Shown here one piece after another: positions 20,913 to 64,000 of a stretch of 64,000 nt of DNA (position 1 is its first letter; each line of letters starts with the position of its first letter). A model generated the notes under the pieces. That model was not told where the DNA came from. It saw only the letters and a list, made by a program, of their open reading frames with translations, and did not search any database. A program made the translations under genes and the position numbers. The stretch is taken from positions 62,001 through 126,000 of the IMG/VR virus record IMGVR_UViG_3300028654_000001; one strand, written 5' to 3'.

Positions 20913-21689
20913 ATGGCCGACGAGATCGAAGACTATTGGGAGGGGATTAGACCCCCTCGAGAGCCGGTTCCCCAGGCCTCGGACTGGCATAGGTTCTTCC
21001 CAGAGGGGCCGCCTAGTGCCGAACTCCCCTTCGGTATAACTCAGGACCTCCTAGCTAGGAACCGGGGTATCATTGAAGTAGTTCGTCAAGGACTCTACTC
21101 AGAGCTGGGTCGTGACCCTACTACAGATGAGATAATCACCGGACTAATCCCAGAGTTGGTATTTAGAGGGAGACTTCTGCAGCTGTACCCAGATCCTGGG
21201 CGGGATTTTGCACCTATTCGCCAGACACTCAGCACTCATCTGGGACGTGAGCCTAACATTCAAGAGATCCAAGACGCTTACAATAAAGAGGCCATCAGAA
21301 CCCTTAGCCAGTATAACCCCGTCCCCGAGACCCAAGAAGAGCTTGAGGCCTTACGGCCCGAGACACCCGCCGGTGAATCTCTTGGTAATAGGGTTGATCC
21401 AACCCATGCAGATATTCACCAAGCCCTTATAGATGGCTTGGGTCGAGATCCAACCATCCAAGAGATGAGTGAGGCCTACTCCTACCTAACCCGAGGGTTC
21501 AACCTCACCGAGCACCTCCTGAACCGGATCACCCATGACCTCGGGGCTCTTGGCTTCCCACCAGAGTCAATCACCATTGACCGGTCCATCGAAGGTGATG
21601 CACAGAGCCTGACCATCCACATGCCAAGGACCCAGCAAACCCAACTCACTGGACCTGGACACAGTAGCGTCACATTCCATAGATCATAG
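20913..21689 (+). CDS. DIESYW-family protein with three LGR(D/E)Pxx(D/Q)E repeats
   Basis: MADEIEDYWEGIRPP; LGRDPTTDEI, LGREPNIQEI, LGRDPTIQEM; C-terminal LGALGFPPESI. Confidence 0.8.
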   Translation: MADEIEDYWEGIRPPREPVPQASDWHRFFPEGPPSAELPFGITQDLLARNRGIIEVVRQGLYSELGRDPTTDEIITGLIPELVFRGRLLQLYPDPGRDFAPIRQTLSTHLGREPNIQEIQDAYNKEAIRTLSQYNPVPETQEELEALRPETPAGESLGNRVDPTHADIHQALIDGLGRDPTIQEMSEAYSYLTRGFNLTEHLLNRITHDLGALGFPPESITIDRSIEGDAQSLTIHMPRTQQTQLTGPGHSSVTFHRS

Positions 21690-31804: not shown

Positions 31805-32415
31805 GAGCTAGGGGGTCACGACCTTTGACAATGAAGACTTGGTCGCTATCTTCTATTTCGAGGGTGGGCATACGGGGTCAGGTTTCAAGCAACCCAAGTT
31901 GAAGTTCTCTGGGTAGTCTTTGTAGAGTTGTTCCCATTCCTGGTGATGGCCGCAGGCAGGGGTACAGCGTTTGATGTTTTGAATTGGGTGTTTGGCACAT
32001 CGGGGGCAGGTGACATAGTTATGAAGCCAATCTGGGTTGGATTTGAAGGCCCACTTCGTGTAGGCATACCGGAGCTTTGGGAAGCGGCCAAGGGGCATCC
32101 AGACGAGGACATAGAAGGTGATGCAGCACCAAGGGAAGCCAGAGCATCGGCCGTGTCGGATGTCTAGGGAGAGCATCCTCAGCGTGTAGGGGATTGGCTT
32201 CATAGGCTTGACATCTTGTTCTTTCTTGTAGGCCCGGGGGCACAGAAGACGTAGACGACCATCATTATTACTTGGGTCTTCCAGGTGTAGTTCCCGAGGG
32301 GTAGTATTACGGTAAGCGACTCCAATAGTCCGAAGGCGAGGGTACCGATCCAGAACTTTCGATTCCTTTTGAGTTCTTGGAGTATGTGTAGGTACGGGTT
32401 CAAGTGATAGTTTTC

Positions 32416-32451
32416 GTTTCAATGAACGGGAAGATCCTATGCGCTTCCCAG
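32416..32451 (-). CRISPR. Solitary CRISPR repeat (type D), copy 1
   Basis: CTGGGAAGCGCATAGGATCTTCCCGTTCATTGAAAC: hairpin plus the array 3' end. Confidence 0.85.
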
Positions 32452-33345
32452 TGATTTAGTTAGTCAATTGAGAGTCAATGAGGTTCTTTCCACAGTTGGG
32501 GCATTTGGGGTGGGCTGTATTGGAGCAGCTCTGGCGGGTATGCACGGGGTCAGACCTTCTATCGTAGGTGGGAGAGCAGCATCCAGGAGAGCGCGAGGGC
32601 AAGGGTGAGGGTAACTGACCAGGTGAGGTAGTGGGGGCGTCTACAGTCCACCCAGAAGCCTTTGCAGGTGTACCCGAGGGACAGGTCTCCGGTTCCGACC
32701 CGGTGGGCACCACAGAGGGTCTTACCACATTGGACACAGGGGAGTGTTCCATCCGTGGAGCCGCAGACGGCACACGGTTTAGACTTCAAGGGGTGACCAT
32801 TGGTTTGGATAGGTTTAGAAACTCTTCTCGGGTGGGTTCGATCTTGATGACGGTTTCCATCGATTTCTGGAAGCCACCTCTATACTGTCGTAGTTTCATT
32901 GGGTGTCCTTTTGCTAGCAGAACTGGGAAAGGCACGGTTTGATACCGAGCTCTTTGTGAAGGCGGACGGGGACACCTGTTCCATCGCATCCGGGGCAGGT
33001 CTTGGAGCCACCATCTGGGGGTGAAGACGTATTCGTTGGTAGTCAGGTCACGGGAGAAGGAGCCCGTGGGGACAGATCCAAGGCAGTCATCGCAGAGTGG
33101 GCATTCAGGGTGTGGCATCAGGGTGAGCGATTCAGGTGCAAGCTGTTGTAGGAGCCGTCTGGGTTGACCGTCCATCGAGCTCCATGTTTACCGAGGTGAG
33201 GGCCTTCATGGCCTCTTGGTAGGTCGCACGGATCCATGTAGTGGACTTCCATGCATCTCGGGTGGTGCTGACAGCATATGAGGCAGAAGCCTGTATCATA
33301 CTCGTCTCGGCATTCCAGTTCTGGGTGGACAGGGCACTTCATGAT

Positions 33346-34143
33346 TTAGGCCAATCTGACAGCGAGAGAGGAGGATCCATCGGTGTCTTGTTGATCCCCG
33401 AACTGTTCTAGCTCTACTGATCCTTTGGGGACCTTGGGCTTATAGGTTCTGGGGGTGAGGGACTTTCGGAAGTGTCCTTCCTTTTTGTCCAGGTAGATCA
33501 GGGTATCGTCTCCTTGGGAGCAGACCAGCAGGTCATATTTGAGGGCTAGTTGGGCGATGGTTTTGGCATCGACGTCGATGGCTTGGCCGTCCATCCAACC
33601 CTCTTTGGCTAAGTCTTTGTCGATGTCGGTGGACTTTTTCCAGTTGATGATTCGGAAGACGGGTTGTTTTTTCGGTGTAGGGGCTGCCTTGATGATTTCG
33701 ACGGGTTTTTGAGGTAGTGGCACGGTATAGCTTGGGGTATCATCCATTGGGTTAACCTCATCGAGCAGGTCATCTGGTTCATCAGCGATGGCATTTGAGG
33801 AAGCGAGCCAGAGGTTGGGGTCCCAGGGGAAGTCACCGTTGAGGTGGCCGATCCATTCCTCTTTGGTGGCCATGCGCCATTGGCCCCTGAGTTCTTCCCC
33901 AGTGGAAGACTTGATTAGTTTCCCTCTCCAGATGTAGACGCCCTGGACGAGCGTACTGAGGTCTTTATCGAGGGAGGTATCGAGGGTACCGAGATCTTCT
34001 AAGTAATCTAGGGCAGGGCCAATATGGTCAAGGACGAGGCATCTTTGGTCTTGGACTACAACGAGGGCACGGTCTTTTGGGCAGGTGCCTTCTGGTTTGT
34101 AGACTCCACCTCTACTTTGTTCTACGCTTTGGATGGGAGTCAT
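33346..34143 (-). CDS. Hypothetical protein (MTPIQSVE...)
   Basis: The ORF-track start (TTG 34230) lies inside the solitary repeat; next ATG used. Confidence 0.65.
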   Translation of the reverse strand: MTPIQSVEQSRGGVYKPEGTCPKDRALVVVQDQRCLVLDHIGPALDYLEDLGTLDTSLDKDLSTLVQGVYIWRGKLIKSSTGEELRGQWRMATKEEWIGHLNGDFPWDPNLWLASSNAIADEPDDLLDEVNPMDDTPSYTVPLPQKPVEIIKAAPTPKKQPVFRIINWKKSTDIDKDLAKEGWMDGQAIDVDAKTIAQLALKYDLLVCSQGDDTLIYLDKKEGHFRKSLTPRTYKPKVPKGSVELEQFGDQQDTDGSSSLAVRLA

Positions 34144-34223
34144 AGGCTGATTCCGAGTTCCTGATGTAAGCGGACTAGGCACTTCATGATTTTCATGCCA
34201 ATTGGACAGCGAGGGCAGGGCCT

Positions 34224-34259
34224 GTTTCAATGAACGGGAAGGTCCTATGCGCTTCCCAG
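34224..34259 (-). CRISPR. Solitary CRISPR repeat (type D), copy 2
   Basis: 35/36 identical to 32416-32451. Confidence 0.85.
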
Positions 34260-51693: not shown

Positions 51694-53848
51694 GTTTCAA
51701 TGAACGGGGAGCCCTTCGGCTCCCCATCTGTTCTAACTTGATAAACACCAACCAACATCGCCTGGACGTGGGCGTCTGCGTTTCAATGAACGGGGAGCCC
51801 TTCGGCTCCCCTCACACCGGTACTCACCGTACCACCGGTCGCGCATGTTTCAATGAACGGGGAGCTCTTCGGCTCCTCTCACCTCGTACAGGGCGTCGAG
51901 AACGCTTAACCTTGGGTGACTTCACCAAAGGTTGGTTTCAATGAACTGGAAGCCCTTCGGCTTCCCTCACCGTACTTCATCCCCACTATCCCTGTGGTTA
52001 CTGCTTTGTTTCAATGAACGGGGAGCTCTTCGGCTCCCCTCACCTTGCTGCAGTGCGACAATTCAAATCCGACGTTTCGTTTCAATGAACGGGGAGCTCT
52101 TCGGCTCCCCTCACCGAGAAAGGCTTGTTGTTTTGTCAATCCGTTCCCAAGTTTCAATGAACGGGGAGCTCTTTGGCTCCCCTCACTCAAGATGTCTGGG
52201 ACCGTTACCAGGACGCGGAATTGTTTCAATGAACGGGGAGCCGAAGGGCTCCCCTCACTTTTCGGGGTAATGGGCTCCGGTGATGCTTTTATCGTTTCAA
52301 TGAACGGGGAGCCCTTCGGCTCCCCTCACACACCTTACCGCGGATGAGCTGCAACAGTACTTAGGTGTTTCAATGAACGGGGAGCCCTTCGGCTCCCCTC
52401 ACCTACCTGAGGCCAGGCTCGAACCCGCAAAGGAGAGTTTCAATGAACGGGGAGCCCTTCGGCTCCCCTCACCAAATAGACTTGGTTCCCCCTCCTCTTC
52501 GATGGCTGTTTCAATGAACGGGGAGCCCTTCGGCTCCCCTCACCCGGTTTTTTTCCGCCTGAGCCCGCGGATGATGATGTTTCAATGAACGGGGAGCCCT
52601 TCGGCTCCCCTCACCGACCGCTTCTTTTACGGACATTTTGATGGTTTCAATGAACGGGGAGCCGAAGGGCTCCCCTCACGATACAGACGCACTGGTTGCC
52701 AGTGTTGCTGGGACACCGTTTCAATTAACGGGGAGCCGAAGGACTCCCCTCACTTCGAGGGCAAATCGGTCCGGGCATTTAGCAAGTCGCGTTTCAATGA
52801 ACGGGGAGCTTTTTGGCTCCCCTCACTAGTGTCGCAAGGGTATGGATTGGAAGAGCCAGTTGTGTTTCAATGAACGGGGAGCTCTTCGGCTCCCCTCACG
52901 AACATGAACTATTGAACGCTCTCCTCCTTAGGCTGTTTCAATGAACGGGGAGCTCTTCGGCTTCCCTCACTCAGAACCGCCCAACTCGAACTTGATGGGG
53001 TCAACACGTTTCAATGAACGGGGAGCCCTTCGGCTTCCCTCACGAAGCAGAACGCTATTACTCGTCGGAGCCCCAGAGGTTTCAATGAACGGGGAGCCCT
53101 TCGGCTTCCCTCACGAAGCAGAACGCTATTACTCGTCGGAGCCCCAGAGGTTTCAATGAACGGGGAGCCCTTCGGCTTCCCTCACCTTCAGTAGGTCCCT
53201 TGAGGTCCTTTTCCATTCACGGAGTTTCGCGTTTCAATGAACGGGGAGCCCTTCGGCTCCCCTCACTGCGTGAGGGGACATCTAGCGGTTCCTTCTTTGG
53301 ATGTTTCAATGAACGGGGAGCTCTTCGGCTCCCCTCACAATCACGTCGAGGTCACGTCCACAGAGTACTAGATCGTTTCAATGAACGGGGAGCTCTTCGG
53401 CTCCCCTCACGACAACGGCAGTAGTCTGCTTGTCTATCCAACCGGTTGTTTCAATGAACGGAGAGCTCTTCGGCTCCCCTTCGGCTCCCCTCACTGGTAA
53501 TTAGCGCCAAGCTTGGCCTTTGGATTGGGAGTTTCAATGAACGGGAAGCCCTTCGGCTCCCCTCACCAGGGCGGATCGAACGCGAGCCAAGGTGGATCGA
53601 TTGGTTTTAATGAACGGGGAGCTCTTCGGCTCCCTTACTGAATAGGTTTGCTAAACCTCATAATTTCAATGAGCAGACCTTTTGATGATCCTACCGAAGT
53701 TCGTTTCAAGTCATTCCAAGCCGCATATGTTTCAATGTTTCAATGTTTCAATGAACGGGGAGCCGAAGAGCTCCCCTCACCTAACATGGGGGACCCGTTG
53801 GATTGTGACTTCGTTTCAATGAACGGGGAGCTCTTCGGCTCCCCTCAC
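51694..53848 (-). CRISPR. CRISPR array, repeat A (GTGAGGGGAGCCGAAGGGCTCCCCGTTCATTGAAAC), about 29 repeats
   Basis: 36-nt repeats with mostly 29-40-nt spacers; many variant repeats; degenerate distal end at 51694. Confidence 0.97.
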
Positions 53849-53893
53849 TTATCAACTCGGCTACCCCTGAGCCTGTCAGATGGGGGTTTGTTT

Positions 53894-54366
53894 GTTTCAA
53901 TGAACGTGGGGATCTTTTGATGATCCCCACCAGGCGAGTGAGCACTACCTGCGATGGTTAGCACCCGTTTCAATGAACGTGGGGATCTTTTGATGATCCC
54001 CACGCATCAATGGGCAGACTTCGCCCTTCGTGAGGGGTTTTTCAATGAACGTGGGGATCTTTTGATGATCCCCACTATGAGTCACCCGGCGTTTTCGGAA
54101 CTGCTTAGGTGTATTTCAATGAACGTGGGGATCTTTTGATGATCCCCACGCACCTGCTAAATCGAAAGCCCCACCCATTGCAACGTTTCAATGAACGTGG
54201 GGATCTTTTGATGATCCCCACCTACGATCTCCATGCTGATGACTCATGCTCGGAATGGTTTCAATGAACGTGGGGATCTTTTGATGATCTCCACACACGG
54301 ACCCGCTATATTGTAGGACGCTGGATCGATCACCAATGAACGTGGGGATCTTTTGATGATCCCCAC
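53894..54366 (-). CRISPR. CRISPR array, repeat B (GTGGGGATCATCAAAAGATCCCCACGTTCATTGAAAC), 7 repeats
   Basis: 37-nt repeats contiguous with array A on the leader side. Confidence 0.95.
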
Positions 54367-54560
54367 ACCCCTAGTTTCAATAGAGTAAAGACATCTGTTA
54401 CTTATGATTCAGTTTGCGAGAGGTTAGCTACCTGTCTAGTAGGCGGGTAGCTCTATACCGACCCCCACTTCAGTAGATCAATTTTCAAGGACCAAGTGAT
54501 ATGCGAGAGGCTAGGGAGTATCTGTTACCACCTAGCCTCTCGCATACCCGAACTAGTACA
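54367..54560 (-). promoter_or_regulatory. CRISPR leader for arrays B/A
   Basis: ATGCGAGAGG...CCTCTCGCAT inverted repeat plus TTGAAAATTGAT, shared with the array C leader. Confidence 0.75.
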
Positions 54561-54600
54561 GATCCTACCATGTGACGAGGATCTGTACCTCAATGCTGGT

Positions 54601-55128
54601 TTAGCCAGAACCAACCCCTTGATTTCCCCAAGTTATCTGATTTGGAGGGTGTACAATCATCGGAAGGTTATCTGGGTTACCATCGAACATCGACTCACCT
54701 ATTGGATACAGGGTGTCTTCCGAATAGCACAGTCCAATTTCATAATGATTACCACCAGCGCACCCGCCTCCAACACCGATTACTGCATAGACATGACCGA
54801 AGTCAATACCACTTGCTTGGATGAGTTTTTGAGCCCACCCAACCACAAGAGTTTTTTGGGCTTCATCAAAACCATCATCTAGGAAGCTTAGCTTGTCACC
54901 TTCGGGTATGACTCTAAGGTGAAACAACCGGTCTTTTCTTGAATCCACTAGTACCTGGGCCTCGTTGGTGAGCACCTCAGCTATTTCTGGAATGTTGGTT
55001 GTGTCAAGGTAGTAGACAACGGTGTCTGGTTCTCGACCAAAGTAGAATCCTTCATCGACCAGGTACTTGTCTGTTAGAAGCCAGTGTATTTGGATCTCAT
55101 TCATGACTTTTACCCTGTGTACAACCAC
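54601..55128 (-). CDS. Unknown protein, last gene of the cas operon
   Basis: Overlaps 55110..55349. Confidence 0.65.
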   Translation of the reverse strand: MVVHRVKVMNEIQIHWLLTDKYLVDEGFYFGREPDTVVYYLDTTNIPEIAEVLTNEAQVLVDSRKDRLFHLRVIPEGDKLSFLDDGFDEAQKTLVVGWAQKLIQASGIDFGHVYAVIGVGGGCAGGNHYEIGLCYSEDTLYPIGESMFDGNPDNLPMIVHPPNQITWGNQGVGSG

Positions 55129-55349
55129 CGGCTTGACTGGTCTGGGTTGCTACTGGGGGGTACCTGACCGTGGTCTAACTTCTCCTTGATCCTGCAGATG
55201 GCAATGCCAGCTGCGGCCTGTTGAGGGCGAACTCCAAGAGCTTTGGCCAACTGCTCAGTACTGAACTTTTTGTGCTTCTTGGCGAACTCCAAGACTCGGT
55301 TTGCATCCAATCGATCACTAGTTTTTGAACTCTTCTTACGCGCTGCCAT
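55110..55349 (-). CDS. Small winged-HTH protein
   Basis: FSTEQLAKALGVRPQQAAAGIA. Confidence 0.7.
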   Translation of the reverse strand: MAARKKSSKTSDRLDANRVLEFAKKHKKFSTEQLAKALGVRPQQAAAGIAICRIKEKLDHGQVPPSSNPDQSSRWLYTG

Positions 55350-55352
55350 TGA

Positions 55353-56105
55353 TTACCTATCCCATCTCGCCTTGTAGGCGGTTACCATTCCTGCTCTGAA
55401 GAACAGGCGAAGTGTTGCCATTTGTGAGAACGTCTTCCCATCACAATGGTAAAGCTGAAAGTTACTCATCAAGTCACTCACATTGGTAGCAGACCCAACC
55501 CACCCCTTGGATTTCAACTTATTGACCCAAAACTCAGCTTGTTTTTCTTTACTTCTGATCAGATCCCCACCCAACGTTGACTTTTGAACATAGGCATTCG
55601 TAATAACTGCACAGCACTTCAACGGCCCCTTGACTGTAGGTTCCACAACACCATCGACTATGCTGTCAATCTTGTCCACCCAATAATGGTGCCCGAGCTC
55701 GCCGGTGTCGTCAAAATTGAATATCCCGATTGGTCTAGTTGGTGTATTTTCACACAACTTTGAGGCCCGAGCATAACCGTCTGGTTGATACCCATACCTG
55801 AAAAGTATGTCTTTACCAACAGGGCCGCTGTACAGATCAAGATTCCTCTCGTACTCTAACCCTCTAAGTCGACAAATGACCTCTAGGTTGCAGTCAACTC
55901 CAATGAAGTCTCTGTCATCGGTCAGATACTTTCGAATCATGTTAAAAAACTGCCAACCTGAGTAACCTAGTAACTCATAGTAGGAGCAGATTAACTTACC
56001 TCCTGACCAGAGAGGCTTCAGCCTTGGATCTAGGAAAAATGTGCGGTTCATTCGCCACCAGGGGTCCTTGTCAAAAGGGCCTGATTCAGGATTACTCTTC
56101 TTCAT
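55353..56105 (-). CDS. Cas-associated protein, possible SAM-dependent methyltransferase fold
   Basis: YYELLGYSG (motif I-like), FIGVDCN (motif II-like), IFNFDDTG; ATGA-coupled to the helicase. Confidence 0.45.
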   Translation of the reverse strand: MKKSNPESGPFDKDPWWRMNRTFFLDPRLKPLWSGGKLICSYYELLGYSGWQFFNMIRKYLTDDRDFIGVDCNLEVICRLRGLEYERNLDLYSGPVGKDILFRYGYQPDGYARASKLCENTPTRPIGIFNFDDTGELGHHYWVDKIDSIVDGVVEPTVKGPLKCCAVITNAYVQKSTLGGDLIRSKEKQAEFWVNKLKSKGWVGSATNVSDLMSNFQLYHCDGKTFSQMATLRLFFRAGMVTAYKARWDR

Positions 56106-58501
56106 TGGTCGCTCGACTCCCCGCTAACTAGAGCACAGGCCTCTTCAAGAGTTAGACCTTCAGGTAGTTTTTTACCAACTAACCTGCGTAGGTACTTATA
56201 GACAGGGCACCTTCTTCCATGAGACTCCCTGAAGGCTTCTCTATTAGCAGCCACCACCTCATGGTAGTGATCAGTCCACTTATCAAGTTTCTCTCTCCAC
56301 AACTCACCGTACTTTCGTTTGATGGCCCATTGACGGAGCCCTCCAACAAGTACAGGCCCAAAAGCACCCCTCTTTAGGAACGAGTGGCAAGTGGCAAATG
56401 TATAGGTACTACTAGGAGTCAACTTATCCAGTATGTCCGGGCATCTCTCATTGAGTTCAAGAAAGTTATCATAGTATTGTTCCATGTCACTCATGGACTT
56501 TGGTATACACTTTGAGGATATACCACCAAACTTAGAACCCCAGTAAACTAAGTCAACAGATCCAAAGTTATGAAGGGAGTCCGATTGAGTCTTTATCTTG
56601 AACTCCTCACACAAGGCATCCAGTTCTTCTAGTAGGTCTGGGTTATTTGGATCCCTAGCTCGGGTCCTGCGGATGAAAGCCCCATCTAACTTGGGGGAGT
56701 CAGTACTCTCCATCAGACGTTGTATAATAGCCTCATTCAAAGCCTGATCATCAACCTCGATGTACTTTTTCCCGGCTTCCTCAACTTTAGGGATGGCAAC
56801 AAACTTCTCATACACTCTGGCCAACTTCCTGGGGTTGACATCAGCGTCATCCTCTGTTTTGACTGACTCCCACCACTTAAGGGCTTCTCCCACCAGTAAC
56901 CTGGCGTGAAGAGCCTCCTTTGGTTTCACCTGATTCTTTAGGATTGTGTCGGTAACATCGTGATTGAGCTCATTCAGTATGCCGTGCTTCTTGAACACAC
57001 TAATAATCAAGGATATGTTAGAAAGTCCCACCATGGTGGCCAGGGTACTGAGAAGACCCATCAAATATGGGCTACTCTCTTTTTGAGGCGCTGTGATGTA
57101 TACTTGTTTCGACACCCCTTGCCATTTCTCTGGGTAACCCTTGATAGTAGGTACCGCTGTTTTACTGTAGTCACGCTTTCCATTCTCATCCAACTCTATA
57201 TCTAGACGTAGTCTCATGAGACGACCAGGCAACTGTGCTGATAGTACCTCTGACTGTGGGATACCAATGGATATCCCAAGGCACCTGCAAGGGGAATCCA
57301 GCCCTTCAGTAGCTCTCTGGATGGCTAGTATGACAGGATTTTTTTGTATGTCAGAGTAAGTTACACCAGTTATCCTCTCTTTTTCAATGAGATCAGTCAA
57401 CTTATTGTTGCCGCCGAATCCTATGGCATCAACAACATCGACTCCAAACGGCTCCTTCTTGAAAGCCTCTCGTTGTGCAACCCTGAGATCCTCATTAGTG
57501 CTAGCTGGGCAAAAACAACAAGACCTAGAAACTGTAGGTACACGGCCATGCCTATCCCAAATGTCGACCACCTCTTGTGCTAAACCACCGATTTTTTCCG
57601 CCTTAGCCATCAGCATTTCCTGATCAGACTCGGAATCTGGTAGATCTCTCAAGGTGAGATTATCGCTCTGAACTAGTTCAAATTCTAGCCTTTCCGGCGC
57701 AAAACCCCTCAGCATCATTTCAGGGAGAGTTCTCTCAAGAACTAGTGTATCCTTAATGCTTACTTGGCTACCATCCCTCCAAAACCCCGAAGTATATTCA
57801 TTCCACGTTATCTCACGAGTATTTGGTGGCTTCCTGTCAGCTCTGAAGTTCGTTGCGGTAAGCCCACAGCTTGCTGTTGAACCTTGTTCAATTAGATTAG
57901 TTTCAAGATCTCCAAGATCAGTACCCTTAGTGGCTGCGTGGTGCTTCTCATCAGGAATCAGGAGAAGCCTTTTTTTGGAGCCCCTCTTAAACTCTTCCAT
58001 CAGTACTTTTTCGGCTTTTACAAACAACTGATGAGTTACCACGAGAATATTAGACTTCTTTGGAGCTGTAAGAAACCTCCCTAACACATCAAAGAGCTTA
58101 GGTGTATCATCGGAAGTAACTGCTACGACTTCAGGTGTCGTTCGCACCACCCCATTCTTACCTACCCTCTTGTACTTTTCCTGCTTGTACTTTTTCGGAT
58201 TGTCCTTTTCCGGTTTACCCCTAAATTGCTTAACAATGTTACTTTGAGGGGCTACTATCAAGATGTGTGTGAAGGGGTTGTTCTCGGAAGCTAGTATCTC
58301 GGAAGCAATAACCTTGGCTTCTAATGACTTTCCAAGACCAGTACCCCACCAAAGTACCACCCGCTCCTGACCCGCTAGGAGAGCTTGAACGGCCTTACCC
58401 ATATCCTCGTCTTGATAGTATCGTAGGGGTTTTGGAGCTTCTTCGTCACAAGGCGTCAAGGTCCTGACTTGCTTGTATTGTAATGTCTTTGGCATGGGCA
58501 C
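56102..58501 (-). CDS. SF2 DExH helicase without HD nuclease domain (not canonical Cas3)
   Basis: GTGLGKS (Walker A), IPDEKHH (Walker B), GLTAT, ATEGLDSP, QLPGRLMR; helicase core starts within about 25 aa; about 300-aa unknown C-terminus. Confidence 0.85.
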   Translation of the reverse strand: MPMPKTLQYKQVRTLTPCDEEAPKPLRYYQDEDMGKAVQALLAGQERVVLWWGTGLGKSLEAKVIASEILASENNPFTHILIVAPQSNIVKQFRGKPEKDNPKKYKQEKYKRVGKNGVVRTTPEVVAVTSDDTPKLFDVLGRFLTAPKKSNILVVTHQLFVKAEKVLMEEFKRGSKKRLLLIPDEKHHAATKGTDLGDLETNLIEQGSTASCGLTATNFRADRKPPNTREITWNEYTSGFWRDGSQVSIKDTLVLERTLPEMMLRGFAPERLEFELVQSDNLTLRDLPDSESDQEMLMAKAEKIGGLAQEVVDIWDRHGRVPTVSRSCCFCPASTNEDLRVAQREAFKKEPFGVDVVDAIGFGGNNKLTDLIEKERITGVTYSDIQKNPVILAIQRATEGLDSPCRCLGISIGIPQSEVLSAQLPGRLMRLRLDIELDENGKRDYSKTAVPTIKGYPEKWQGVSKQVYITAPQKESSPYLMGLLSTLATMVGLSNISLIISVFKKHGILNELNHDVTDTILKNQVKPKEALHARLLVGEALKWWESVKTEDDADVNPRKLARVYEKFVAIPKVEEAGKKYIEVDDQALNEAIIQRLMESTDSPKLDGAFIRRTRARDPNNPDLLEELDALCEEFKIKTQSDSLHNFGSVDLVYWGSKFGGISSKCIPKSMSDMEQYYDNFLELNERCPDILDKLTPSSTYTFATCHSFLKRGAFGPVLVGGLRQWAIKRKYGELWREKLDKWTDHYHEVVAANREAFRESHGRRCPVYKYLRRLVGKKLPEGLTLEEACALVSGESSDQ

Positions 58502-58561
58502 TCACCGAGTCAAGGGAGCAACTAAGGCCCCCTTGACTCCAAATGCTAACAGATCTGATGG

Positions 58562-59500
58562 TTAACCGTCAACTATTTCGATCTCAATCCCCTTTTCGGA
58601 AAGGCCGGAGGTGTCGATTGTGATGTCGTAGTCGTCAACCGAGCTCGGAGGGGGTAGCTCCTTGCCCGTCTGGTTCTTTCTGGTAACTTTGACTCTCCGC
58701 ATCAGGCTTGCGGCCGATTCCTTGCCGTTTGCATCAGGGTGCCGAAAGACAATCATCTTGTGGAAGTGATTGTTGGGCCTGGTTGTGGACCGGAATAGGT
58801 CATAGGACTCCCGAGCGTAGTCAAAAAAGTCAGTGAGATCACCGTAGGTGGTTCCCAAACGAGAGGCGCAGAACGGATTGACGTGGATGTTGGTTCGGAA
58901 CAACCCAAAGGATATGACTGGGATCTTACCCATGGTTCGCTCCTTGTCGATATCCTCCTCCTTGGACACGGCGCCGCGGGTGATGGACAGGTTCATGATC
59001 TCGACACGTTCAGCAGTTTCCCCGAAGCACACTTGGATGGGTCCAGTCACTTGTTCGTTGATCGGATTTGTCAGGGCTCCACCGAACCAGCAAACATCAA
59101 TGTACTTAGTCATCATTTTTACAGCGGCTTCCTTCACATCTCGAGATGACATCTTCGGGTCCGACTCTTTATCACCCTTGGCGCCTTTACCCTTGGCGCC
59201 CTTGGTGTCGGAATAGAGATCCCCACAAGCCTCCTTCATCTTGGTGGATAGGGGTAGACCACCGCGAGCGATGTAGACCTCCCTTCCATGAAGTTGTGCC
59301 GTAGCACGCACCCAGCTCTTGAAACACATGGGTGTCTTGATTCCGTTACCTGTTGACGGATCAACTCGTTGCATGTTGTCGTTATCTGGATCTCCATTGC
59401 CGTTGGATAGCTTGGAGTAGTCAATAAAGACAACATCATGCCGGCGATCAATAACTTTTTCACGGTCAAACTGTTTCATAGTATACATCCGATCTTTCAT
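58562..59500 (-). CDS. cas7: Type I-C Cas7 (Csd2)
   Basis: SNGNGDPDNDNMQRVDP, YIDVCWFG, QVTGPIQVCF, SITRGAV..E, ERTMGK. Confidence 0.93.
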   Translation of the reverse strand: MKDRMYTMKQFDREKVIDRRHDVVFIDYSKLSNGNGDPDNDNMQRVDPSTGNGIKTPMCFKSWVRATAQLHGREVYIARGGLPLSTKMKEACGDLYSDTKGAKGKGAKGDKESDPKMSSRDVKEAAVKMMTKYIDVCWFGGALTNPINEQVTGPIQVCFGETAERVEIMNLSITRGAVSKEEDIDKERTMGKIPVISFGLFRTNIHVNPFCASRLGTTYGDLTDFFDYARESYDLFRSTTRPNNHFHKMIVFRHPDANGKESAASLMRRVKVTRKNQTGKELPPPSSVDDYDITIDTSGLSEKGIEIEIVDG

Positions 59501-59596
59501 CTAATTGAATGGGGACTAACCCCAGTTCATGTAAGTTACTCTTGCTTCAATTATCGGGATACAAAGTCTGTACCCCACACATCCTAATTCAGGGGT

Positions 59597-61258
59597 TTAC
59601 TCTAGCCCTTCTTCAGCAGCCGTCGCTTTGATTTTCTCAGAGCGGTAGCGGTAGAGGCCTGCGTTCTGATGTTCATACCCTAGGACAACTAAGCCCTTTT
59701 GAAGGTTGTTTAGGTTACCTCTCGGAATGTTTATTACCTCTGAGGCAACTCTTCCAAAGTGCTCTCTGTATTCCTGAGGGGTTCGCTCACGATAGAGATC
59801 TGGGTTCATGTTTGCGAAGCAACTCTGGGGATTTGCCAAAAAGGTTCGGATTTCCTTGCACTCAGGAACTTTATTGCCTTTGTGGTAGCTGATTCGCATA
59901 TGGTGAAAAGAAGCGATGTACCGCCCCCAAGCATACGCAAGATCACCACACAAGTCTTCGGAGATGGATCCATCCATGAGTCTGATCTTGTCCTCCAACT
60001 CATCCTCGTTGTTTTCCTTCTTGAATGTAATCGACGTCGCCATTACTGTTAGTTCTTTCTGGGCAAGCCCGTGTTCTCGGTAGTAATTTATTTCAGTCCA
60101 CTTGGTGAAGTTAGCTAAGTAAAGGTCACTTGATATGCTGAATAGCTGTTGAGGGATTCGTCCTCCTGTCAGCAAAGCCCACATCGTGTCCTGAATCACT
60201 GATTCAGGGTAGATCGGTTCAAACTTCCCGTTCGAAGTTTCCCCCAGATCACACATGAGCCACCGTAGGTTGACTCGCTGTGGGTTCTGGTACCTCACCT
60301 GCTTCTGAAACAGGAGTAGGTTGTCACGTATCTTACCGACGGTAGTGATAGCCATGTTTCGGATCGAGATGCGAGACATGCTGGGGCGAATCTGAACCAT
60401 ATGAATAGGATCGTTGGTCGACTCAAGATCGGTCAGTATCTTCCAACAGCACTCAACAGCATCCTTGTCCGAGTACCCCATCCCGAGGATTCCCTGAGCC
60501 GCTTCAATGATTGGGTGACTGATTCCGGTAACTGGGATCATCACTATTGATGACTCGTTGGTGTGCACCGCATTGTTTGCAAGCGCGTAACTGAGCCCTG
60601 TCACAACAGTGATTGCTTCCCCAACCTCAATCATGAAGTTGTGCCCTTGCTTCATCCCGAGGAACTTATTGGCCCCTTCGTTAACCGAATGGAGCTTCCC
60701 GTTAGCCCTAACTAAACCAATTCCATTTACTTCGGGTTGGAGTCGAGCTTTTGACCCACCTTTAGCTCCAGACATTAGACTTGGTTCGGTCAGGCAGTCC
60801 GGGTTACCATCTTTCCCAAGGATAGTCAGTTTCTGACTTTGAAACAGCTTGTTGCAAGCTTCGTAACAGGCCGATCCAATGGATTCTAGACTACCAACTG
60901 GTGTACCCTTGAATGTCAGAACAACCCAGTTGGTGGGTTCGATCTCAGGATACTTCAGCGATCCCTCCAAGAACTTGATAGCTGCTTGATACAAGGTCCT
61001 GTGCTTTTTGAAGATCGGTAGGTGAACTTCCCAGAAGACAGACTCAGGGTCGAGTACGACCTTCTTGGAGTCATAGCCCGAACATGGATAGAGAGACGCT
61101 TCTGTGGCACGCCCCGTAATGGCCTTCTGAGGCATCACGAAGGTCTTGTGCTTGGTTGCGACTCCAGTGGTCAGCTCCAAGGTAAAAACATTCTTACGAG
61201 TCTCTGGGGTGGCATCAACTCGACTTCCTAGGGATTGGAGATCCCAATAGAGGTTCAT
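59597..61258 (-). CDS. cas8c: Divergent type I-C Cas8c (Csd1) large subunit
   Basis: KLHSVNEGA..FLG..QG.N, AYAWGR, QKGLVVLGYEHQ; lies between cas5 and cas7. Confidence 0.8.
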   Translation of the reverse strand: MNLYWDLQSLGSRVDATPETRKNVFTLELTTGVATKHKTFVMPQKAITGRATEASLYPCSGYDSKKVVLDPESVFWEVHLPIFKKHRTLYQAAIKFLEGSLKYPEIEPTNWVVLTFKGTPVGSLESIGSACYEACNKLFQSQKLTILGKDGNPDCLTEPSLMSGAKGGSKARLQPEVNGIGLVRANGKLHSVNEGANKFLGMKQGHNFMIEVGEAITVVTGLSYALANNAVHTNESSIVMIPVTGISHPIIEAAQGILGMGYSDKDAVECCWKILTDLESTNDPIHMVQIRPSMSRISIRNMAITTVGKIRDNLLLFQKQVRYQNPQRVNLRWLMCDLGETSNGKFEPIYPESVIQDTMWALLTGGRIPQQLFSISSDLYLANFTKWTEINYYREHGLAQKELTVMATSITFKKENNEDELEDKIRLMDGSISEDLCGDLAYAWGRYIASFHHMRISYHKGNKVPECKEIRTFLANPQSCFANMNPDLYRERTPQEYREHFGRVASEVINIPRGNLNNLQKGLVVLGYEHQNAGLYRYRSEKIKATAAEEGLE

Positions 61259-61905
61259 GCTGACCTCCTATTGAGCCGCTTGATTCCCATGTTTCGAACA
61301 ACGTCCCAAGAAGGATATCGAACAACCCCGTGTGACATGGTCAACGGTGCAAAGTAATACGGTGTTTCTGGATCATCCCAATCAACATCATAGAACATCA
61401 GGCCGAAGTCAGGCGAGATATCGACTGGGTTTGCAGGCTCTTCAGCGGCTTCCAAGTAACACTTGCACTCGGAGGTTCCAAAGTAGATGCGCCGTCGTTC
61501 AACACCCATCCGAAGACGATCTCGGAACATCTTGTCGAACTTTGGGATATTGTCCTCAGGGCCGGCTTTACTTGAAAGCTTGAATTGGCACTCAATAATG
61601 CAATCGTAATTCCGTAGATAAGTCGACGTTCGTTGAGTCCGGTCCTCTTCAATAATGATAGGTTTGTTTGGGGAGTTTGAGTCAAAGCTCAGTTCGTTGA
61701 GAAGCATAGGGTGGTATACTGGCTTACTTTGGAGGGATAGACTGAGGATCCTCCAATCAATTGCCTTGTGCCCGCATATCCCCCTTGGAAGGGCAACCCC
61801 CGCTGAGTGAGATGGGATCAGTGAACTGATCCTCTCTGACCTGAATGCTGGTTGGTTGAACAATGCATAGGGTCCCCATGCATGTATCCTGTATATTGGT
61901 GACAT
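61255..61905 (-). CDS. cas5: Type I-C Cas5 (Cas5c/Cas5d)
   Basis: WGPYALFNQP..RSER, IEEDRTQR, YFGTSEC, DFGLMFYDVD, MSHGVV. Confidence 0.92.
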   Translation of the reverse strand: MSPIYRIHAWGPYALFNQPAFRSERISSLIPSHSAGVALPRGICGHKAIDWRILSLSLQSKPVYHPMLLNELSFDSNSPNKPIIIEEDRTQRTSTYLRNYDCIIECQFKLSSKAGPEDNIPKFDKMFRDRLRMGVERRRIYFGTSECKCYLEAAEEPANPVDISPDFGLMFYDVDWDDPETPYYFAPLTMSHGVVRYPSWDVVRNMGIKRLNRRSA

Positions 61906-62059
61906 CTAGTTCGATTCCTCCTGGTTTGATTGACTTTCCTACTTGGGAGTGGCTAAGGTAGCCACCTTCTATGAAGTTTAGCAAGACACTTCTCAATCAG
62001 GTCGTATAATAAGTAGGATGTTGACCCACACCAGTGATTTTGGTTGAACTAGACTACCT

Positions 62060-62283
62060 TACCAGCTACATTCGAATGGATCTGCATCAGTTATGCGAGA
62101 GGTTAGGTGCCACTAAAAGTAAGGCAACCTCTCGCATACTAGCTAGGTCTTTGAAAATTGATATTAATCAATTAGCTAGCAGCTACCAATTGCACGAGTT
62201 TAACTGAGTTACCTGAAGTTCGAAACGTAGTTCTCGAGATCAATCCTGTAACTGGTTGGACTCTCTAGTTCTATAGGTGACTA
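62060..62283 (+). promoter_or_regulatory. CRISPR leader for array C
   Basis: ATGCGAGAGG...CCTCTCGCAT...TTGAAAATTGAT at 62093-62162. Confidence 0.75.
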
Positions 62284-63986
62284 CTGGGGATCCTTGATTG
62301 GATCCCCGTTCATTGAAACTCTCGATACAATGCTCCCAGAGGAAGCCTCTCGGTCAGCTGGGGATCCTTGATTGGATCCCCGTTCATTGAAACAGCTTCG
62401 CCACGATGACCGTTTGCGCCTCCCCGTCTTCTGGGGATCCTTGATTGGATCCCCGTTCATTGAAACCCGTAAAGGCGTCAACGTCATCTCGATTCCCATT
62501 CTTGCTGGGGATCCTTGATTGGATCCCCGTTCATTGAAACCTTTCAGTGCCGGTTCTCAGAGATGGGGAGAAGGACCTGGGGATCCTTGATTGGATCCCC
62601 GTTCATTGAAACGATTGTGTGCAGAACGTCGTCGAGCGCGGTGCGTCCTGGGGATCCTTGATTGGATCCCCGTTCATTGAAACACGGAAACTTGCGGAAG
62701 GTCGAATAAAGGGTGAGAACTGGGGATCCTTGATTGGATCCCCGTTCATTGAAACAATGTTGCTGTTTTCCCATCGCCACTCGCAGCGGTCTGGGGATCC
62801 TTGATTGGATCCCCGTTCATTGAAACCATCTCGTTGACCATGGTCCCACCCACTACGAGTGGCTGGGGATCCTTGATTGGATCCCCGTTCATTGAAACCA
62901 CGCTCTGAGAGGGGCATTCGTTACAGCAATGATGGCTGGGGATCCTTGATTGGATCCCCGTTCATTGAAACAAACGAGTCACGGCAATTGCACCGCGTAC
63001 TGGCCCGAGGTCTGGGGATCCTTGATTGGATCCCCGTTCATTGAAACAGGAGCTCTGCGTCTTGACGTAGGAGGCCTTCAGGCTGGGGATCCTTGATTGG
63101 ATCCCCGTTCATTGAAACCAAGTCCTCAAGTTCCTGCGATTCGCTCCGATCATTCTCTGGGGATCCTTGATTGGATCCCCGTTCATTGAAACGTCAATAA
63201 CCTAATGATTCGGTTCGCAGGCTCTGGGCCTGGGGATCCTTGATTGGATCCCCGTTCATTGAAACGAAGAGTATCATCGCTCGAAGTTTCACCTGTAGCA
63301 GGCTGGGGATCCTTGATTGGATCCCCGTTCATTGAAACGATCCACTGAAGACCCTGACTCCTCGGACTTAGGGCTGGGGATCCTTGATTGGATCCCCGTT
63401 CATTGAAACGGAGCCCTACCTAGTCTGTTCAAGAGCGAGGGAGAGCTGGGGATCCTTGATTGGATCCCCGTTCATTGAAACTGGAACCTTCTTCTGCTCT
63501 ACCGACAGACCGTTGAGCAGCTGGGGATCCTTGATTGGATCCCCGTTCATTGAAACGGCCCTCTTGGGCTGACACCCGGACCCATAAAGATCTGGGGATC
63601 CTTGATTGGATCCCCGTTCATTGAAACTTGGGTTTGATTTTGACTATCCGCTCTCCATAGCAGCTGGGGATCCTTGATTGGATCCCCGTTCATTGAAACG
63701 AGACCAAGACAAGGATTATTCCTCCTCGTCCAGTCTGGGGATCCTTGATTGGATCCCCGTTCATTGAAACACGTCCATGAGTCGCTTGGTCTGATTGGCG
63801 CAAAGTAGCTGGGGATCCTTGATTGGATCCCCGTTCATTGAAACTGGTTGAGGTGAAATCGGTTCGGGCAGCTCGTTGGCTGGGGATCCTTGATTGGATC
63901 CCCGTTCATTGAAACACTCAGCTCCCGAACTCGTTCGAGTCGCTCACGGACTGGGGATCCTTGATTGGATCCCCGTTCATTGAAAC
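62284..63986 (+). CRISPR. CRISPR array, repeat C (CTGGGGATCCTTGATTGGATCCCCGTTCATTGAAAC), 24 identical repeats, likely continues past the window
   Basis: Invariant 36-nt repeats with 34-40-nt unique spacers. Confidence 0.98.
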
Positions 63987-64000
63987 GACAGTAGCAACGC

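What the first reader, a model, noticed from the sequence alone, without database searches (positions are those of the whole stretch)
51694..64000. Phage-borne type I-C Cascade with no Cas3, coupled instead to an HD-less helicase, a methyltransferase-like protein and an HTH protein
Seen: cas5-cas8c-cas7 are followed on the same strand by a 799-aa DExH helicase, a 250-aa ORF (ATGA overlap), a 79-aa wHTH and a 175-aa ORF. About 60 repeats flank the operon on both sides, and there is no cas1/2/3/4/6 in the window. Known: type I interference needs the Cas3 HD nuclease. This helicase starts directly with its ATPase core and looks more like Res/SSL2-type helicases. From memory, Cas3-less type I variants with another helicase have been reported in huge phages, so the core may not be new; the three downstream genes are the possibly undescribed part. 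Inference: an RNA-guided, non-cutting effector (silencing, unwinding or DNA modification) used against rival mobile elements or host genes.
Basis: partly seen in the sequence, partly recalled or inferred. Interest (0 to 1): 0.9.

Follow-up and report, generated by a model that had tools for sequence, protein, structure and literature searches.

The report
Cas3-less phage Cascade with helicase–methyltransferase-like module
A 512-kb phage carries a type I-C-like CRISPR system in which the usual DNA-shredding Cas3 is replaced by a conserved set of three genes (a nuclease-less motor helicase, a methyltransferase-fold protein and a small DNA-binding-like protein). At least one guide exactly matches a smaller phage from the same sample, so the system probably attacks rival phages by a mechanism not yet known.

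Summary
On the minus strand lie cas5c, cas8c, cas7, a 799-aa DExH helicase, a 250-aa ORF (ATGA overlap), a 79-aa ORF and a 175-aa ORF. They are flanked by 35 and 24 repeats, and no Cas1/3/4/6 was found in the window.

New results:
- The helicase, the 250-aa protein and mostly the 79-aa protein follow cas5-cas8c-cas7 in 8 sampled lineages (250-aa identity down to about 22%), and also in the published CasΦ Biggiephage, where all three are labelled "hypothetical".
- The 250-aa protein models confidently as a class I SAM-methyltransferase fold with the cofactor-pocket residues conserved. It matches no Pfam family and lacks DNA-methyltransferase catalytic motifs.
- The helicase motor is closest to HsdR, XPB and RadD, not Cas3. 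It has no HD domain, and its α-helical C-terminus has no family-wide conserved acidic or histidine residues.
- One spacer matches 37/37 bases in two ~45-kb phage contigs, one from the same sample, next to a TTC PAM.

Best reading (confidence about 0.5): crRNA-guided, nuclease-independent interference against rival phages. The core was noted in 2020; the conserved accessory module is undescribed. The 175-aa gene is specific to the closest clade.

The parts
51694..54294 (-). CRISPR array 1: 35 repeats of 36-37 nt and 34 intervals. It is composite. Six repeats have a GUGGGGAUC/GAUCCCCAC stem and the rest have a GGGGAGC/GCUCCCC stem. A 105-nt non-repeat stretch at 53640-53744 splits the array, and one spacer is duplicated.
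   Evidence: stem-loop plus 11-nt single-stranded tail, z-scores -4.5 to -5
54601..55128 (-). 175-aa ORF of unknown function. It overlaps the end of the 79-aa gene by 19 nt and is found only in the closest clade.
   Evidence: 89% identical in L002; only 3 close homologues at 80-86% identity; no Pfam, PADLOC, NCBIfam or PHROG hit
55110..55349 (-). 79-aa small protein, probably a winged helix-turn-helix. It is the third conserved accessory gene.
   Evidence: homologues at 36-94% identity directly after the MTase-like gene in L002, L004, L012, L021 and L024/25, and after the array in the published Biggiephage; only sub-threshold HTH_19, PafC-HTH, FtsK-gamma and DeoR hits
55353..56105 (-). 250-aa protein with a class I SAM-methyltransferase-like fold, translationally coupled to the helicase by an ATGA overlap
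   Evidence: AF2 pLDDT 85.8, pTM 0.87. Named Foldseek hits in PDB and BFVD are almost all methyltransferases or same-fold enzymes. There are 34 clusters in 1.84 billion representatives. G47, G50 and D109 are nearly invariant, the residue at D71 is always D or E, and D132, W142, N170 and the M-x-T-x-R motif are invariant. No Pfam hit in any of 25 members.
56102..58501 (-). 799-aa SF2 DExH helicase/translocase. Motifs: I GTGLGKS, II DEKHH, III TAT, VI QLPGRLMR. It has a roughly 320-aa α-helical C-terminal domain of unknown fold and no HD domain.
58562..59500 (-). cas7 (Csd2-like)
   Evidence: Pfam Cas_Cas7 2.3e-47; PDB type I-C Cas7 chains 8G9S and 7KHA, about 2e-29
59597..61258 (-). cas8c (Csd1-like); the N-terminal ~155 residues are outside the Pfam match
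   Evidence: Pfam Cas_Csd1 1.5e-10 over residues 157-535; PADLOC Cas8c; no PDB sequence hit
61255..61905 (-). cas5c (Cas5d-like, presumed pre-crRNA endonuclease)
   Evidence: PADLOC Cas5c 2.9e-26; PDB 7KHA_A 1.1e-19; the GKH segment of D. vulgaris Cas5 aligns to PKF here
61906..62282 (.). Intergenic region between cas5 and array 2, probably holding divergent promoters and the leader
   Evidence: 85% identical over 311 nt to the same region of L002. A promoter-like site on the plus strand at 61983-62010 is not above chance.
62283..64000 (+). CRISPR array 2: 24 repeats in the window, all with a GGGGAUCC/GGAUCCCC stem. It is transcribed away from the cas operon and continues about 0.7 kb beyond the window.
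62394..62430 (+). Spacer A2_02, with a perfect protospacer in two other phage contigs next to a TTC PAM

Best explanation
This is a member of a distinct, conserved, Cas3-less derivative of type I-C CRISPR-Cas carried by large phages.

Shown:
- Cas5c, Cas8c and Cas7 are I-C-type proteins.
- The repeats form a stem-loop followed by the 11-nt I-C handle.
- The arrays are large and differ completely between related phages.
- One spacer matches a co-occurring ~47-kb phage perfectly, next to the I-C PAM TTC.
- In every lineage where enough contig was available, the Cascade genes were followed by an SF2 DExH motor with intact ATPase motifs and no recognisable nuclease. A class I methyltransferase-fold protein is translationally coupled to that motor, and a ~75-aa helix-turn-helix-like protein usually follows.

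Inferred:
- Cas5c processes the pre-crRNA, and Cascade forms an R-loop at TTC-flanked targets in rival phages.
- The Cas8c side recruits the helicase/MTase-like complex in place of Cas3.
- The motor then unwinds or translocates from the R-loop using ATP. This blocks transcription or replication of the target without shredding it, as type IV-A does with CasDinG.
- The methyltransferase-fold subunit, whose SAM-pocket residues are conserved, either modifies the exposed target nucleic acid or acts as a SAM-binding adaptor or regulator of the motor.
- The small HTH protein either adds DNA contact or regulates the operon.
- New spacers are presumably acquired with Cas1-Cas2-Cas4 supplied in trans, by the host or from elsewhere in the phage genome.
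For: - I-C identity of the Cascade genes.
- Repeat structure and handle.
- Same handle type in relatives' arrays, which hold about 20 to more than 40 repeats each.
- No shared spacers between the window and L002.
- Perfect 37/37 protospacer with a 5' TTC in L028 (same sample, 3300028654) and in L027.
- Conserved synteny in L002/3, the ENA contigs, L004/5, L007/8, L013, L014/15, L021/22 and L024/25. The published Biggiephage has the same order.
- Helicase motifs conserved family-wide.
- Helicase closest to HsdR (4.9e-11), XPB, RadD and LlaGI, with no Cas3 chain at E<=1.
- No Cas3 or HD HMM hit in Pfam, PADLOC or NCBIfam.
- No invariant D, E or H in the helicase C-terminal domain.
- Methyltransferase fold and conserved pocket residues.
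- Translational coupling of helicase and MTase-like gene: and coordinates.
Against: - No biochemical data exist.
- The helicase structure model failed (pLDDT 34.8), so an unrecognised nuclease fold in its C-terminal ~320 residues is not excluded.
- The MTase-like family matches no Pfam methyltransferase model and has no DPPY/NPPY or PCQ motif. DNA methylation is therefore speculative, and the protein could be catalytically inert.
- Only about 68 kb of the 512-kb genome was seen, so a cas3 or cas1-cas2 elsewhere is possible.
- Only one of four tested spacers found a target, so no strand bias or PAM logo is available.
- The His of the K-H pair proposed (from memory) as catalytic in Cas5d is Phe here.
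Confidence: 0.5

Rival explanations
1. The module does cut. An unrecognised nuclease degrades the target after helicase loading, making it a functional analogue of Cas3 built from unrelated parts. The nuclease could lie in the helicase's α-helical C-terminal domain, in the 175-aa protein, or in a repurposed active site of the methyltransferase-fold protein.
For: Most DNA-targeting type I systems destroy their targets, and DinG-HNH and HNH-Cascade variants show repeated re-invention of cutting (PMC10910872). The C-terminal ~320 aa of the helicase has no assignable fold. Within the window's own clade several His and Asp residues are conserved.
Against: Those His and Asp residues are not conserved across the wider family. 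The helicase length varies from 619 to 839 aa (908 aa in the Biggiephage), with the C-terminus partly dispensable. The 175-aa gene is absent from most lineages. No nuclease HMM matches any of the seven proteins.
Confidence: 0.2
2. The phage Cascade borrows a Cas3 in trans, either from a type I-C host or encoded far away in the 512-kb genome. The helicase module would then serve another purpose, such as spacer acquisition, R-loop clearing or regulation.
For: The Cascade is clearly I-C-like with a canonical TTC PAM. Adaptation genes must also come from elsewhere. Only 68 of 512 kb were inspected.
Against: The helicase sits where cas3 would be in every lineage, and no locus shows cas3 within 10 kb. 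For the circularised Biggiephages, Supplementary Table 1 of the 2020 paper lists cas5, cas7, cas8 and cas12J, and the text says a helicase stands instead of Cas3. The Cas8c N-terminal region is diverged.
Confidence: 0.15
3. The system is not an interference weapon but an RNA-guided regulator. Cascade with the helicase and HTH protein would tune expression of phage or host genes, and the solitary repeats in the same genome would be part of that circuit.
For: Two solitary repeats lie in 5'-UTR-like positions at 32416 and 34224. An HTH-like protein is encoded in the operon. No nuclease is recognisable.
Against: About 67 spacers with complete turnover between relatives and a perfect match to another phage with a correct PAM are signatures of adaptive targeting of foreign DNA. 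No spacer matches the window itself outside the arrays.
Confidence: 0.1
4. The locus is a decaying remnant of a type I-C system that lost cas3 and the adaptation genes, and the downstream genes are unrelated passengers.
For: There is no cas1/2/3/4 in the locus. One relative (L012) has a helicase lacking its first RecA domain and no Cascade genes within 8 kb.
Against: The gene order is kept over divergence down to about 22% identity. ATPase and SAM-pocket motifs are intact, the genes overlap, the arrays are large and non-overlapping between relatives, and one spacer has a perfect target.
Confidence: 0.03

Closest known systems
'Type I-C variant' of CasΦ-bearing Biggiephages (Al-Shayeb et al. 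2020, Nature 578:425, PMC7162821; phages SR-VP_PHAGE_CIR_63_141 and _139)
   Same: The gene order cas5-cas8c-cas7-helicase is the same. There is no cas1, cas2, cas3 or cas6, the carrier is a huge phage, and Cas5 active-site residues deviate. In the deposited GenBank file, the helicase (908 aa) is followed by a 231-aa protein with the family motifs (FIGVDTD ... RMANLRL). A 78-aa protein of the small-HTH family lies after the array.
   Different: The paper mentions only 'a helicase protein instead of Cas3'. All three accessory genes are annotated 'hypothetical protein' there. The window's phage is a different lineage: about 50% GC against the '63' in the published phages' names (read as %GC), a 799-aa against a 908-aa helicase, two flanking arrays, and an extra 175-aa gene. 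No CasΦ was seen in the 68 kb available.
Canonical type I-C CRISPR-Cas (Desulfovibrio vulgaris 7KHA; Neisseria lactamica 8G9S)
   Same: Cas5c, Cas8c and Cas7 are homologous. There is no Cas6. The repeat is a stem-loop followed by the ...AUUGAAAC handle, spacers are 34-37 nt, and the PAM is TTC.
   Different: There is no Cas3 (HD plus helicase) and no Cas1-Cas2-Cas4 in the locus. An unrelated SF2 motor, a methyltransferase-fold protein and a small HTH protein stand in their place. The His of the K-H pair proposed (from memory) as catalytic in Cas5d is replaced.
Type IV-A CRISPR-Cas with CasDinG
   Same: A multisubunit crRNA complex is paired with a nuclease-free helicase, carried on a mobile element and used in conflicts between elements. 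Interference is by silencing rather than cutting (PMC11519345 abstract; PMC11656645).
   Different: The backbone differs (Csf proteins against I-C Cascade). The helicase is of a different family (DinG is Rad3/XPD-like; this one is ResIII/HsdR/XPB-like). No methyltransferase-fold partner is described for type IV-A in the passages read here.
Type I and type ISP restriction-modification motors (HsdR, LlaGI) with their methyltransferases
   Same: The best sequence-profile match of the helicase core is HsdR (3H1T, 4.9e-11), and LlaGI/LlaBIII also match. A translocase is paired with a methyltransferase-fold subunit and a separate specificity module, which here is Cascade rather than HsdS.
   Different: There is no PD-(D/E)xK nuclease domain and no HsdS. 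The 250-aa protein matches no R-M methyltransferase HMM and lacks the NPPY/DPPY motif. HsdM appears only as one of many weak fold hits.
Other Cas3-less type I derivatives (CAST I-F3/I-B; HNH-Cascade I-F/I-E)
   Same: Cas3 has been lost, and the Cascade targeting module is coupled to a different effector.
   Different: No transposase or TniQ genes were detected: of the window's other ORFs of at least 150 aa, one matched a PADLOC model (a type II restriction enzyme) and seven PHROG families were matched (sigma factor, ParB-like proteins, a tail protein and one unnamed family). No HNH insertion was detected in Cas8 or Cas5.

Membership tests
Type I-C CRISPR-Cas | Cas5c, Cas8c (Csd1) and Cas7 (Csd2) effector genes | tested here: met
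   Pfam, PADLOC and NCBIfam hits. The nearest solved structures are I-C Cascades 7KHA and 8G9S. All three proteins score below NCBIfam's equivalog cut-offs, so they are divergent.
Type I-C CRISPR-Cas | No Cas6; repeat stem-loop followed by an 11-nt handle ending AUUGAAAC, processed by Cas5c | tested here: inconclusive
   The repeat structure and handle are present, and no Cas6 was found among the window ORFs. The His of the K-H pair proposed (from memory) as catalytic in Cas5d is Phe here. Processing itself was not testable.
Type I-C CRISPR-Cas | 5'-TTC PAM on the non-target strand | tested here: met
   The single protospacer found is flanked by TTC in both target contigs. This is one protospacer only.
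Type I-C CRISPR-Cas | Cas3 with HD nuclease and DEAH helicase as effector | tested here: not met
   No Cas3 or HD model matches any ORF in the locus or the window. The rest of the 512-kb genome was not seen.
Type I-C CRISPR-Cas | Cas1-Cas2-Cas4 adaptation module | tested here: not met
   Absent from window ORFs of at least 150 aa and from the array flanks. Cas2-sized ORFs were not screened.
Cas3 helicase family (for the 799-aa protein) | Match to Cas3 core, HD or C-terminal models, or to solved Cas3 structures | tested here: not met
   Only ResIII, DEAD and SNF2 (Pfam), PbeA and REase_I (PADLOC), and EcoAI-R and Dnd restriction (NCBIfam) matched. A family profile against the PDB returned HsdR, XPB, RadD and LGP2, and no Cas3 chain at E<=1.
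Published Biggiephage type I-C variant (Al-Shayeb 2020) | cas5-cas8c-cas7 followed by a non-Cas3 SF2 helicase, in a huge phage, without cas1/2/3/6 | tested here: met
   Paper text and the GenBank file of SR-VP_PHAGE_CIR_63_141, read gene by gene. Homology of the 231-aa and 78-aa proteins was judged by eye from shared motifs, not by a tool.
Class I SAM-dependent methyltransferases (for the 250-aa protein) | Seven-stranded Rossmann-like fold with a β6-β7 hairpin | tested here: met
   AF2 model with pLDDT 85.8 and canonical strand/helix order. Named Foldseek hits in PDB and BFVD are almost all methyltransferases or same-fold enzymes: E 4.5e-5 and 6.5e-6, probability up to 1.0, TM 0.3-0.54.
Class I SAM-dependent methyltransferases (for the 250-aa protein) | SAM-pocket residues: Gly-rich loop after β1, and acidic residues after β2, β3 and β4 | tested here: met
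   E44 is mostly E or D. G47, G50 and D109 are nearly invariant. D71 is always D or E. D132 is invariant in 25 sequences. Assignment of these residues to the pocket was done by position in the model and is an inference.
Class I SAM-dependent methyltransferases (for the 250-aa protein) | Sequence membership in a described methyltransferase family, or a DNA-methyltransferase catalytic motif (D/N/S-PP-Y/F, or PCQ/ENV) | tested here: not met
   No Pfam, PADLOC, NCBIfam or PHROG hit. No PDB sequence-profile hit. Motif IV reads F-N-F-D-D-T.
Class I SAM-dependent methyltransferases (for the 250-aa protein) | Methyl transfer to a defined substrate | not testable with these tools
   Needs biochemistry.
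Type IV-A CRISPR-Cas (considered as a functional analogue) | Csf1/2/3/5 backbone and CasDinG helicase | tested here: not met
   The backbone proteins match only type I-B/I-C Cas models in PADLOC, and the helicase matches no DinG model. The analogy is functional only.
Type I restriction-modification (considered for the origin of the helicase/MTase pair) | HsdR with N-terminal PD-(D/E)xK nuclease; HsdM with NPPF/Y; HsdS | tested here: not met
   The helicase starts with its ATPase core at about residue 25. Only the motor resembles HsdR. No HsdM or HsdS model matches.

The most novel reading that the evidence does not exclude
This would be a natural RNA-guided nucleic-acid-modifying CRISPR effector. 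Cascade would deliver a helicase-coupled SAM-dependent transferase that chemically marks the DNA (or the R-loop or transcript) of a rival phage along the translocation track, silencing or crippling it without any cut. That would be a phage-borne, programmable 'epigenetic' weapon and a new interference principle for class 1 systems.
Probability: 0.2. Interest if true: 0.93.

Novelty: new variant of a known kind. Interest (0 to 1): 0.72.

Why it matters
Type I interference is defined by Cas3. Here an entire phage-borne lineage has replaced Cas3 with a fixed helicase, methyltransferase-fold and HTH module, and it keeps large, rapidly turning-over arrays that hit rival phages.

If the module silences or modifies rather than shreds, it is a second, independent invention of nuclease-free class 1 interference (after type IV-A), and possibly the first natural coupling of a CRISPR targeting complex to a SAM-dependent enzyme. 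That would be relevant to programmable silencing or modification tools.

It also turns a one-line observation from 2020 into a defined family. The family has diagnostic residues (helicase K58 and D184/E185; MTase-like D71, D109, D132, N170), a PAM and a natural target. This makes the mechanism directly testable in laboratory strains.

Tried and rejected
- AF2 on the helicase with a 3-sequence alignment gave pLDDT 34.8 and was unusable. It also consumed one of the two structure jobs, so the C-terminal domain, the 79-aa protein and the 175-aa protein have no models.
- GenBank phages hold nothing similar to the operon DNA, the helicase protein or either array.
- IMG/VR holds no second copy of the helicase family reachable with the pattern search. 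P0008 found nothing there. Broad alignments were too divergent for pattern design.
- The metagenome scan added only two short fragments.
- A genome-contig scan for paired repeat cores gave three single matches in gut Clostridia, judged to be chance or unrelated, so no host was identified.
- Three of four spacers tried in IMG/VR matched only the phage itself.
- No self-targeting, and no cross-targeting between family loci, was seen. One search was swamped by repeat-against-repeat hits and yielded only the leader conservation.
- No Rfam family matches the repeats.
- Sequence-profile searches of the PDB with the MTase-like and small-protein families gave nothing significant.
- An HD domain at the helicase C-terminus was considered because of H/D-rich motifs in the close clade. 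It was rejected because none of these residues is conserved in the wider family.
- The Cell 2022 paper on virus-encoded CRISPR systems is not in the held library, so any treatment of this variant there could not be checked.

Full report
**1. The observation**

The window comes from IMG/VR contig IMGVR_UViG_3300028654_000001, which is 512,571 bp long. From the matching coordinates, the window corresponds to roughly contig positions 62,004-126,003.

On the minus strand lie seven ORFs:
- cas5c, 61255-61905
- cas8c, 59597-61258
- cas7, 58562-59500
- a 799-aa helicase, 56102-58501
- a 250-aa ORF, 55353-56105
- a 79-aa ORF, 55110-55349
- a 175-aa ORF, 54601-55128

The three Cas proteins match the type I-C families in Pfam, PADLOC and NCBIfam. 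Cas5 and Cas7 are closest to the solved I-C Cascades of D. vulgaris (7KHA) and N. lactamica (8G9S). The helicase stop and the start of the 250-aa gene overlap as ATGA.

The 12-nt repeat core GTTCATTGAAAC occurs 61 times, against 0.37 expected by chance. Of these, 35 are in array 1 (51694-54294, minus strand) and 24 are in array 2 (62283-63986, plus strand). Array 2 continues for about ten more repeats beyond the window. Two further copies are solitary.

The repeats fold into an 8-9-bp stem-loop followed by the single-stranded tail UUCAUUGAAAC, which is the I-C type of handle. Four different stem sequences occur with fully compensatory changes, while the tail stays fixed.

No Cas1, Cas3, Cas4 or Cas6 model matches the 32 other window ORFs of at least 150 aa. 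None matches the ten ORFs flanking the arrays either. PHROG hits to tail, ParB-like and sigma-factor families fit a phage.

**2. The accessory genes form a conserved module**

The helicase has only two close relatives in 5.8 billion proteins, at 64-65% identity. Their contigs show the same seven-gene order.

An exhaustive profile search with the 250-aa family found 34 clusters among 1.84 billion representatives, nearly all 210-275 aa long. I looked up the genomic context of nine of them.
- In six, the gene sits directly after cas5-cas8c-cas7-helicase, usually overlapping or within a few bases of the helicase stop. These are L004/5, L007/8, L013, L014/15, L021/22 and L024/25, with 250-aa identities of 22-34%.
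- Two contigs were too short to judge.
- One (L012) has a helicase remnant lacking its first RecA domain, and no Cascade genes within 8 kb. I read this as decay.

The carrier contigs reach 145, 297 and 437 kb.

The 79-aa protein has clear homologues (36-94% identity) in the same position in L002, L004, L012, L021 and L024/25. The 175-aa protein is confined to the window's own clade.

Arrays of about 20 to more than 40 repeats, with ...(A/G)TTGAAA(C/T) ends, accompany the relatives. The window and its 65%-identical relative L002 share no spacers, so the arrays turn over.

**3. What the parts are**

*Helicase.* Walker A (GTGLGKS), DEKHH, TAT and QLPGRLMR are present, and their equivalents are kept across the family. 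Pfam assigns ResIII, DEAD and Helicase_C.
- A family profile against all PDB sequences gives HsdR (3H1T, 4.9e-11), XPB, RadD, LGP2 and LlaGI. It gives no Cas3 chain at E<=1, and nothing for the C-terminal ~320 residues.
- No Cas3 or HD model matches in any library.
- Across the family, the C-terminal domain has no invariant Asp, Glu or His.
- Helicase length ranges from 619 to 839 aa in the fetched loci, and is 908 aa in the Biggiephage.
- The AF2 model was unusable at pLDDT 34.8, so a cryptic nuclease fold cannot be formally excluded.

*250-aa protein.* With a 25-sequence alignment, AF2 gives pLDDT 85.8 and pTM 0.87. The topology is β1-loop-αA-β2-αB-β3-αC-β4-αD-β5-αE-β6-β7.
- Foldseek against the PDB returns essentially only class I SAM methyltransferases and same-fold enzymes: EgtD, MnmM, METTL18, PmtA, YtqB, PacII, HsdM, COMT and spermidine synthase. 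The best E-value is 4.5e-5.
- Against viral models the named hits are again mostly methyltransferases. The best are unannotated or chromo-domain proteins of giant viruses, at TM 0.54.
- The positions that line the SAM pocket in this fold are conserved: E44, G47 and G50 after β1; an acidic residue at 71 after β2; D109 after β3; and invariant D132 at the end of β4. Also invariant are W142, N170 and a C-terminal M-x-T-x-R motif.
- No member matches any Pfam family, and the profile finds nothing in the PDB by sequence.
- Motif IV (FNFDDT) is not a DNA amino- or C5-methyltransferase motif.
- The fold and probable SAM binding are therefore supported. The substrate and the activity are open.

*79-aa protein.* It gets only sub-threshold helix-turn-helix hits: HTH_19, PafC-HTH, DeoR and FtsK-gamma. 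This is consistent with a small winged helix but not proven.

**4. A natural target**

Spacer A2_02 (62394-62430) matches 37 of 37 bases in two other IMG/VR phage contigs. L028 is 47 kb and comes from the same sample, 3300028654. L027 is 42 kb and comes from sample 3300028563.
- In both, the spacer-identical strand is preceded by TTC, the canonical I-C PAM.
- By my own rough estimate, 24 specified bases make a chance match in the collection very unlikely. The match then extends to all 37 bases plus the PAM.
- The protospacer lies just downstream of a RecE/exonuclease-VIII-like gene. It falls inside a plus-strand ORF, and the crRNA is complementary to the coding strand.
- Three other spacers found nothing, and GenBank phages hold no match.

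This shows I-C-type PAM-dependent spacer acquisition from a co-occurring rival phage, and therefore a role in conflict between phages.

**5. Mechanism**

The best-supported model has these steps:
1. Cas5c-processed crRNAs guide the Cascade to TTC-flanked sites in competing phages.
2. The helicase/MTase-like pair, which is translationally coupled and always co-inherited, is recruited in place of Cas3.
3. ATP-driven unwinding or translocation then blocks expression or replication without an intrinsic nuclease. This is functionally like type IV-A with CasDinG.
4. The methyltransferase-fold subunit either modifies the exposed nucleic acid or acts as a SAM-binding adaptor.

Steps 1-2 rest on homology and synteny. 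Steps 3-4 are inference. I put this model at about 0.5.

The rivals are a cryptic nuclease in the module (0.2), a Cas3 supplied in trans (0.15), a regulatory rather than defensive role (0.1), and a decaying remnant (0.03).

**6. What is known**

Al-Shayeb et al. [quoted passage not shown]

I read their GenBank file for SR-VP_PHAGE_CIR_63_141. It shows cas5, csd1 and cas7, then:
- a 908-aa "hypothetical protein" with helicase motifs;
- an overlapping 231-aa "hypothetical protein" carrying the family motifs FIGVDTD ... YDIYKS ... RMANLRL;
- an array;
- a 78-aa "hypothetical protein" of the small-HTH family.

The obligate methyltransferase-fold and HTH partners were not described there.

Full-text searches for such a helicase, or for a CRISPR-associated methyltranserase, found nothing further. 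The eight sampled clusters, six of them MTase-like, carry no functional name: only 'superfamily II DNA or RNA helicase' and 'hypothetical protein'. The Cell 2022 follow-up paper could not be read.

**7. Verdict**

This is a real, conserved and functional-looking system. The window's locus is a new member of a variant noted in 2020. Defining the variant as a fixed Cascade plus helicase plus MTase-fold plus HTH unit is new, as are its PAM and its natural target. The novelty class is "new variant of a known kind", and interest is 0.72.

Noticed in passing
window 32416-32451 and 34224-34259 (minus strand): Two solitary CRISPR-like repeats (CTGGGAAGCGCATAGGA[T/C]CTTCCC + GTTCATTGAAAC) lie 1.8 kb apart, about 17 kb from the arrays. 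Each sits in an intergenic, 5'-UTR-like position. Together they bracket a three-ORF cassette (33346-34230, 32786-33175, 32456-32773) and precede ORF 31853-32422. The stem is weaker (-9 kcal/mol, not above shuffles). They could be Cas5c processing sites in mRNAs or repeat decoys.
   Followed up: partly
window 53640-53744, within array 1: A 105-nt non-repeat stretch splits array 1. It shares a 25-nt match (24 of 25 bases) with the distal end of the homologous array in L002 (16155-16179). Together with the switch of repeat stem type at about 53890, this suggests array 1 was assembled from two or three arrays.
   Followed up: partly
window 53044-53078 and 53115-53149: Two adjacent spacers are identical, a repeat-spacer unit duplication (TRF 100% match).
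   Followed up: no
L012 8281-10981: A relative carries a 575-aa helicase remnant lacking the whole first RecA domain, still followed by intact MTase-like (243 aa) and small HTH (77 aa) genes. No Cascade genes lie within 8 kb upstream. It is either a decaying locus or a Cascade-independent use of the pair.
   Followed up: partly
window 1-51000 (one of 32 ORFs of at least 150 aa; which one was not determined): One ORF matches a PADLOC type II restriction-endonuclease model (2.2e-17). Two ORFs have sigma-70 region hits (15013-15822 and 20913-21689).
   Followed up: no
L001 1678-2211 (just beyond the window end) and L012 3396-3764: A DUF7768/DUF4406/DUF1937 protein lies near the CRISPR locus in two different carrier phages. 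An RNA-ligase gene recurs near the locus in L012 and in an ENA relative. These are hints of shared gene content among the carrier phages.
   Followed up: no
L028 1034-1954 and 2286-2322: The targeted 47-kb phage from the same sample encodes a RecE/exonuclease-VIII-like protein (PHROG 412, 7e-65). The protospacer lies in the next ORF downstream. The protospacer is identical in a 42-kb relative from another sample, although the two contigs are only about 94% identical overall.
   Followed up: partly
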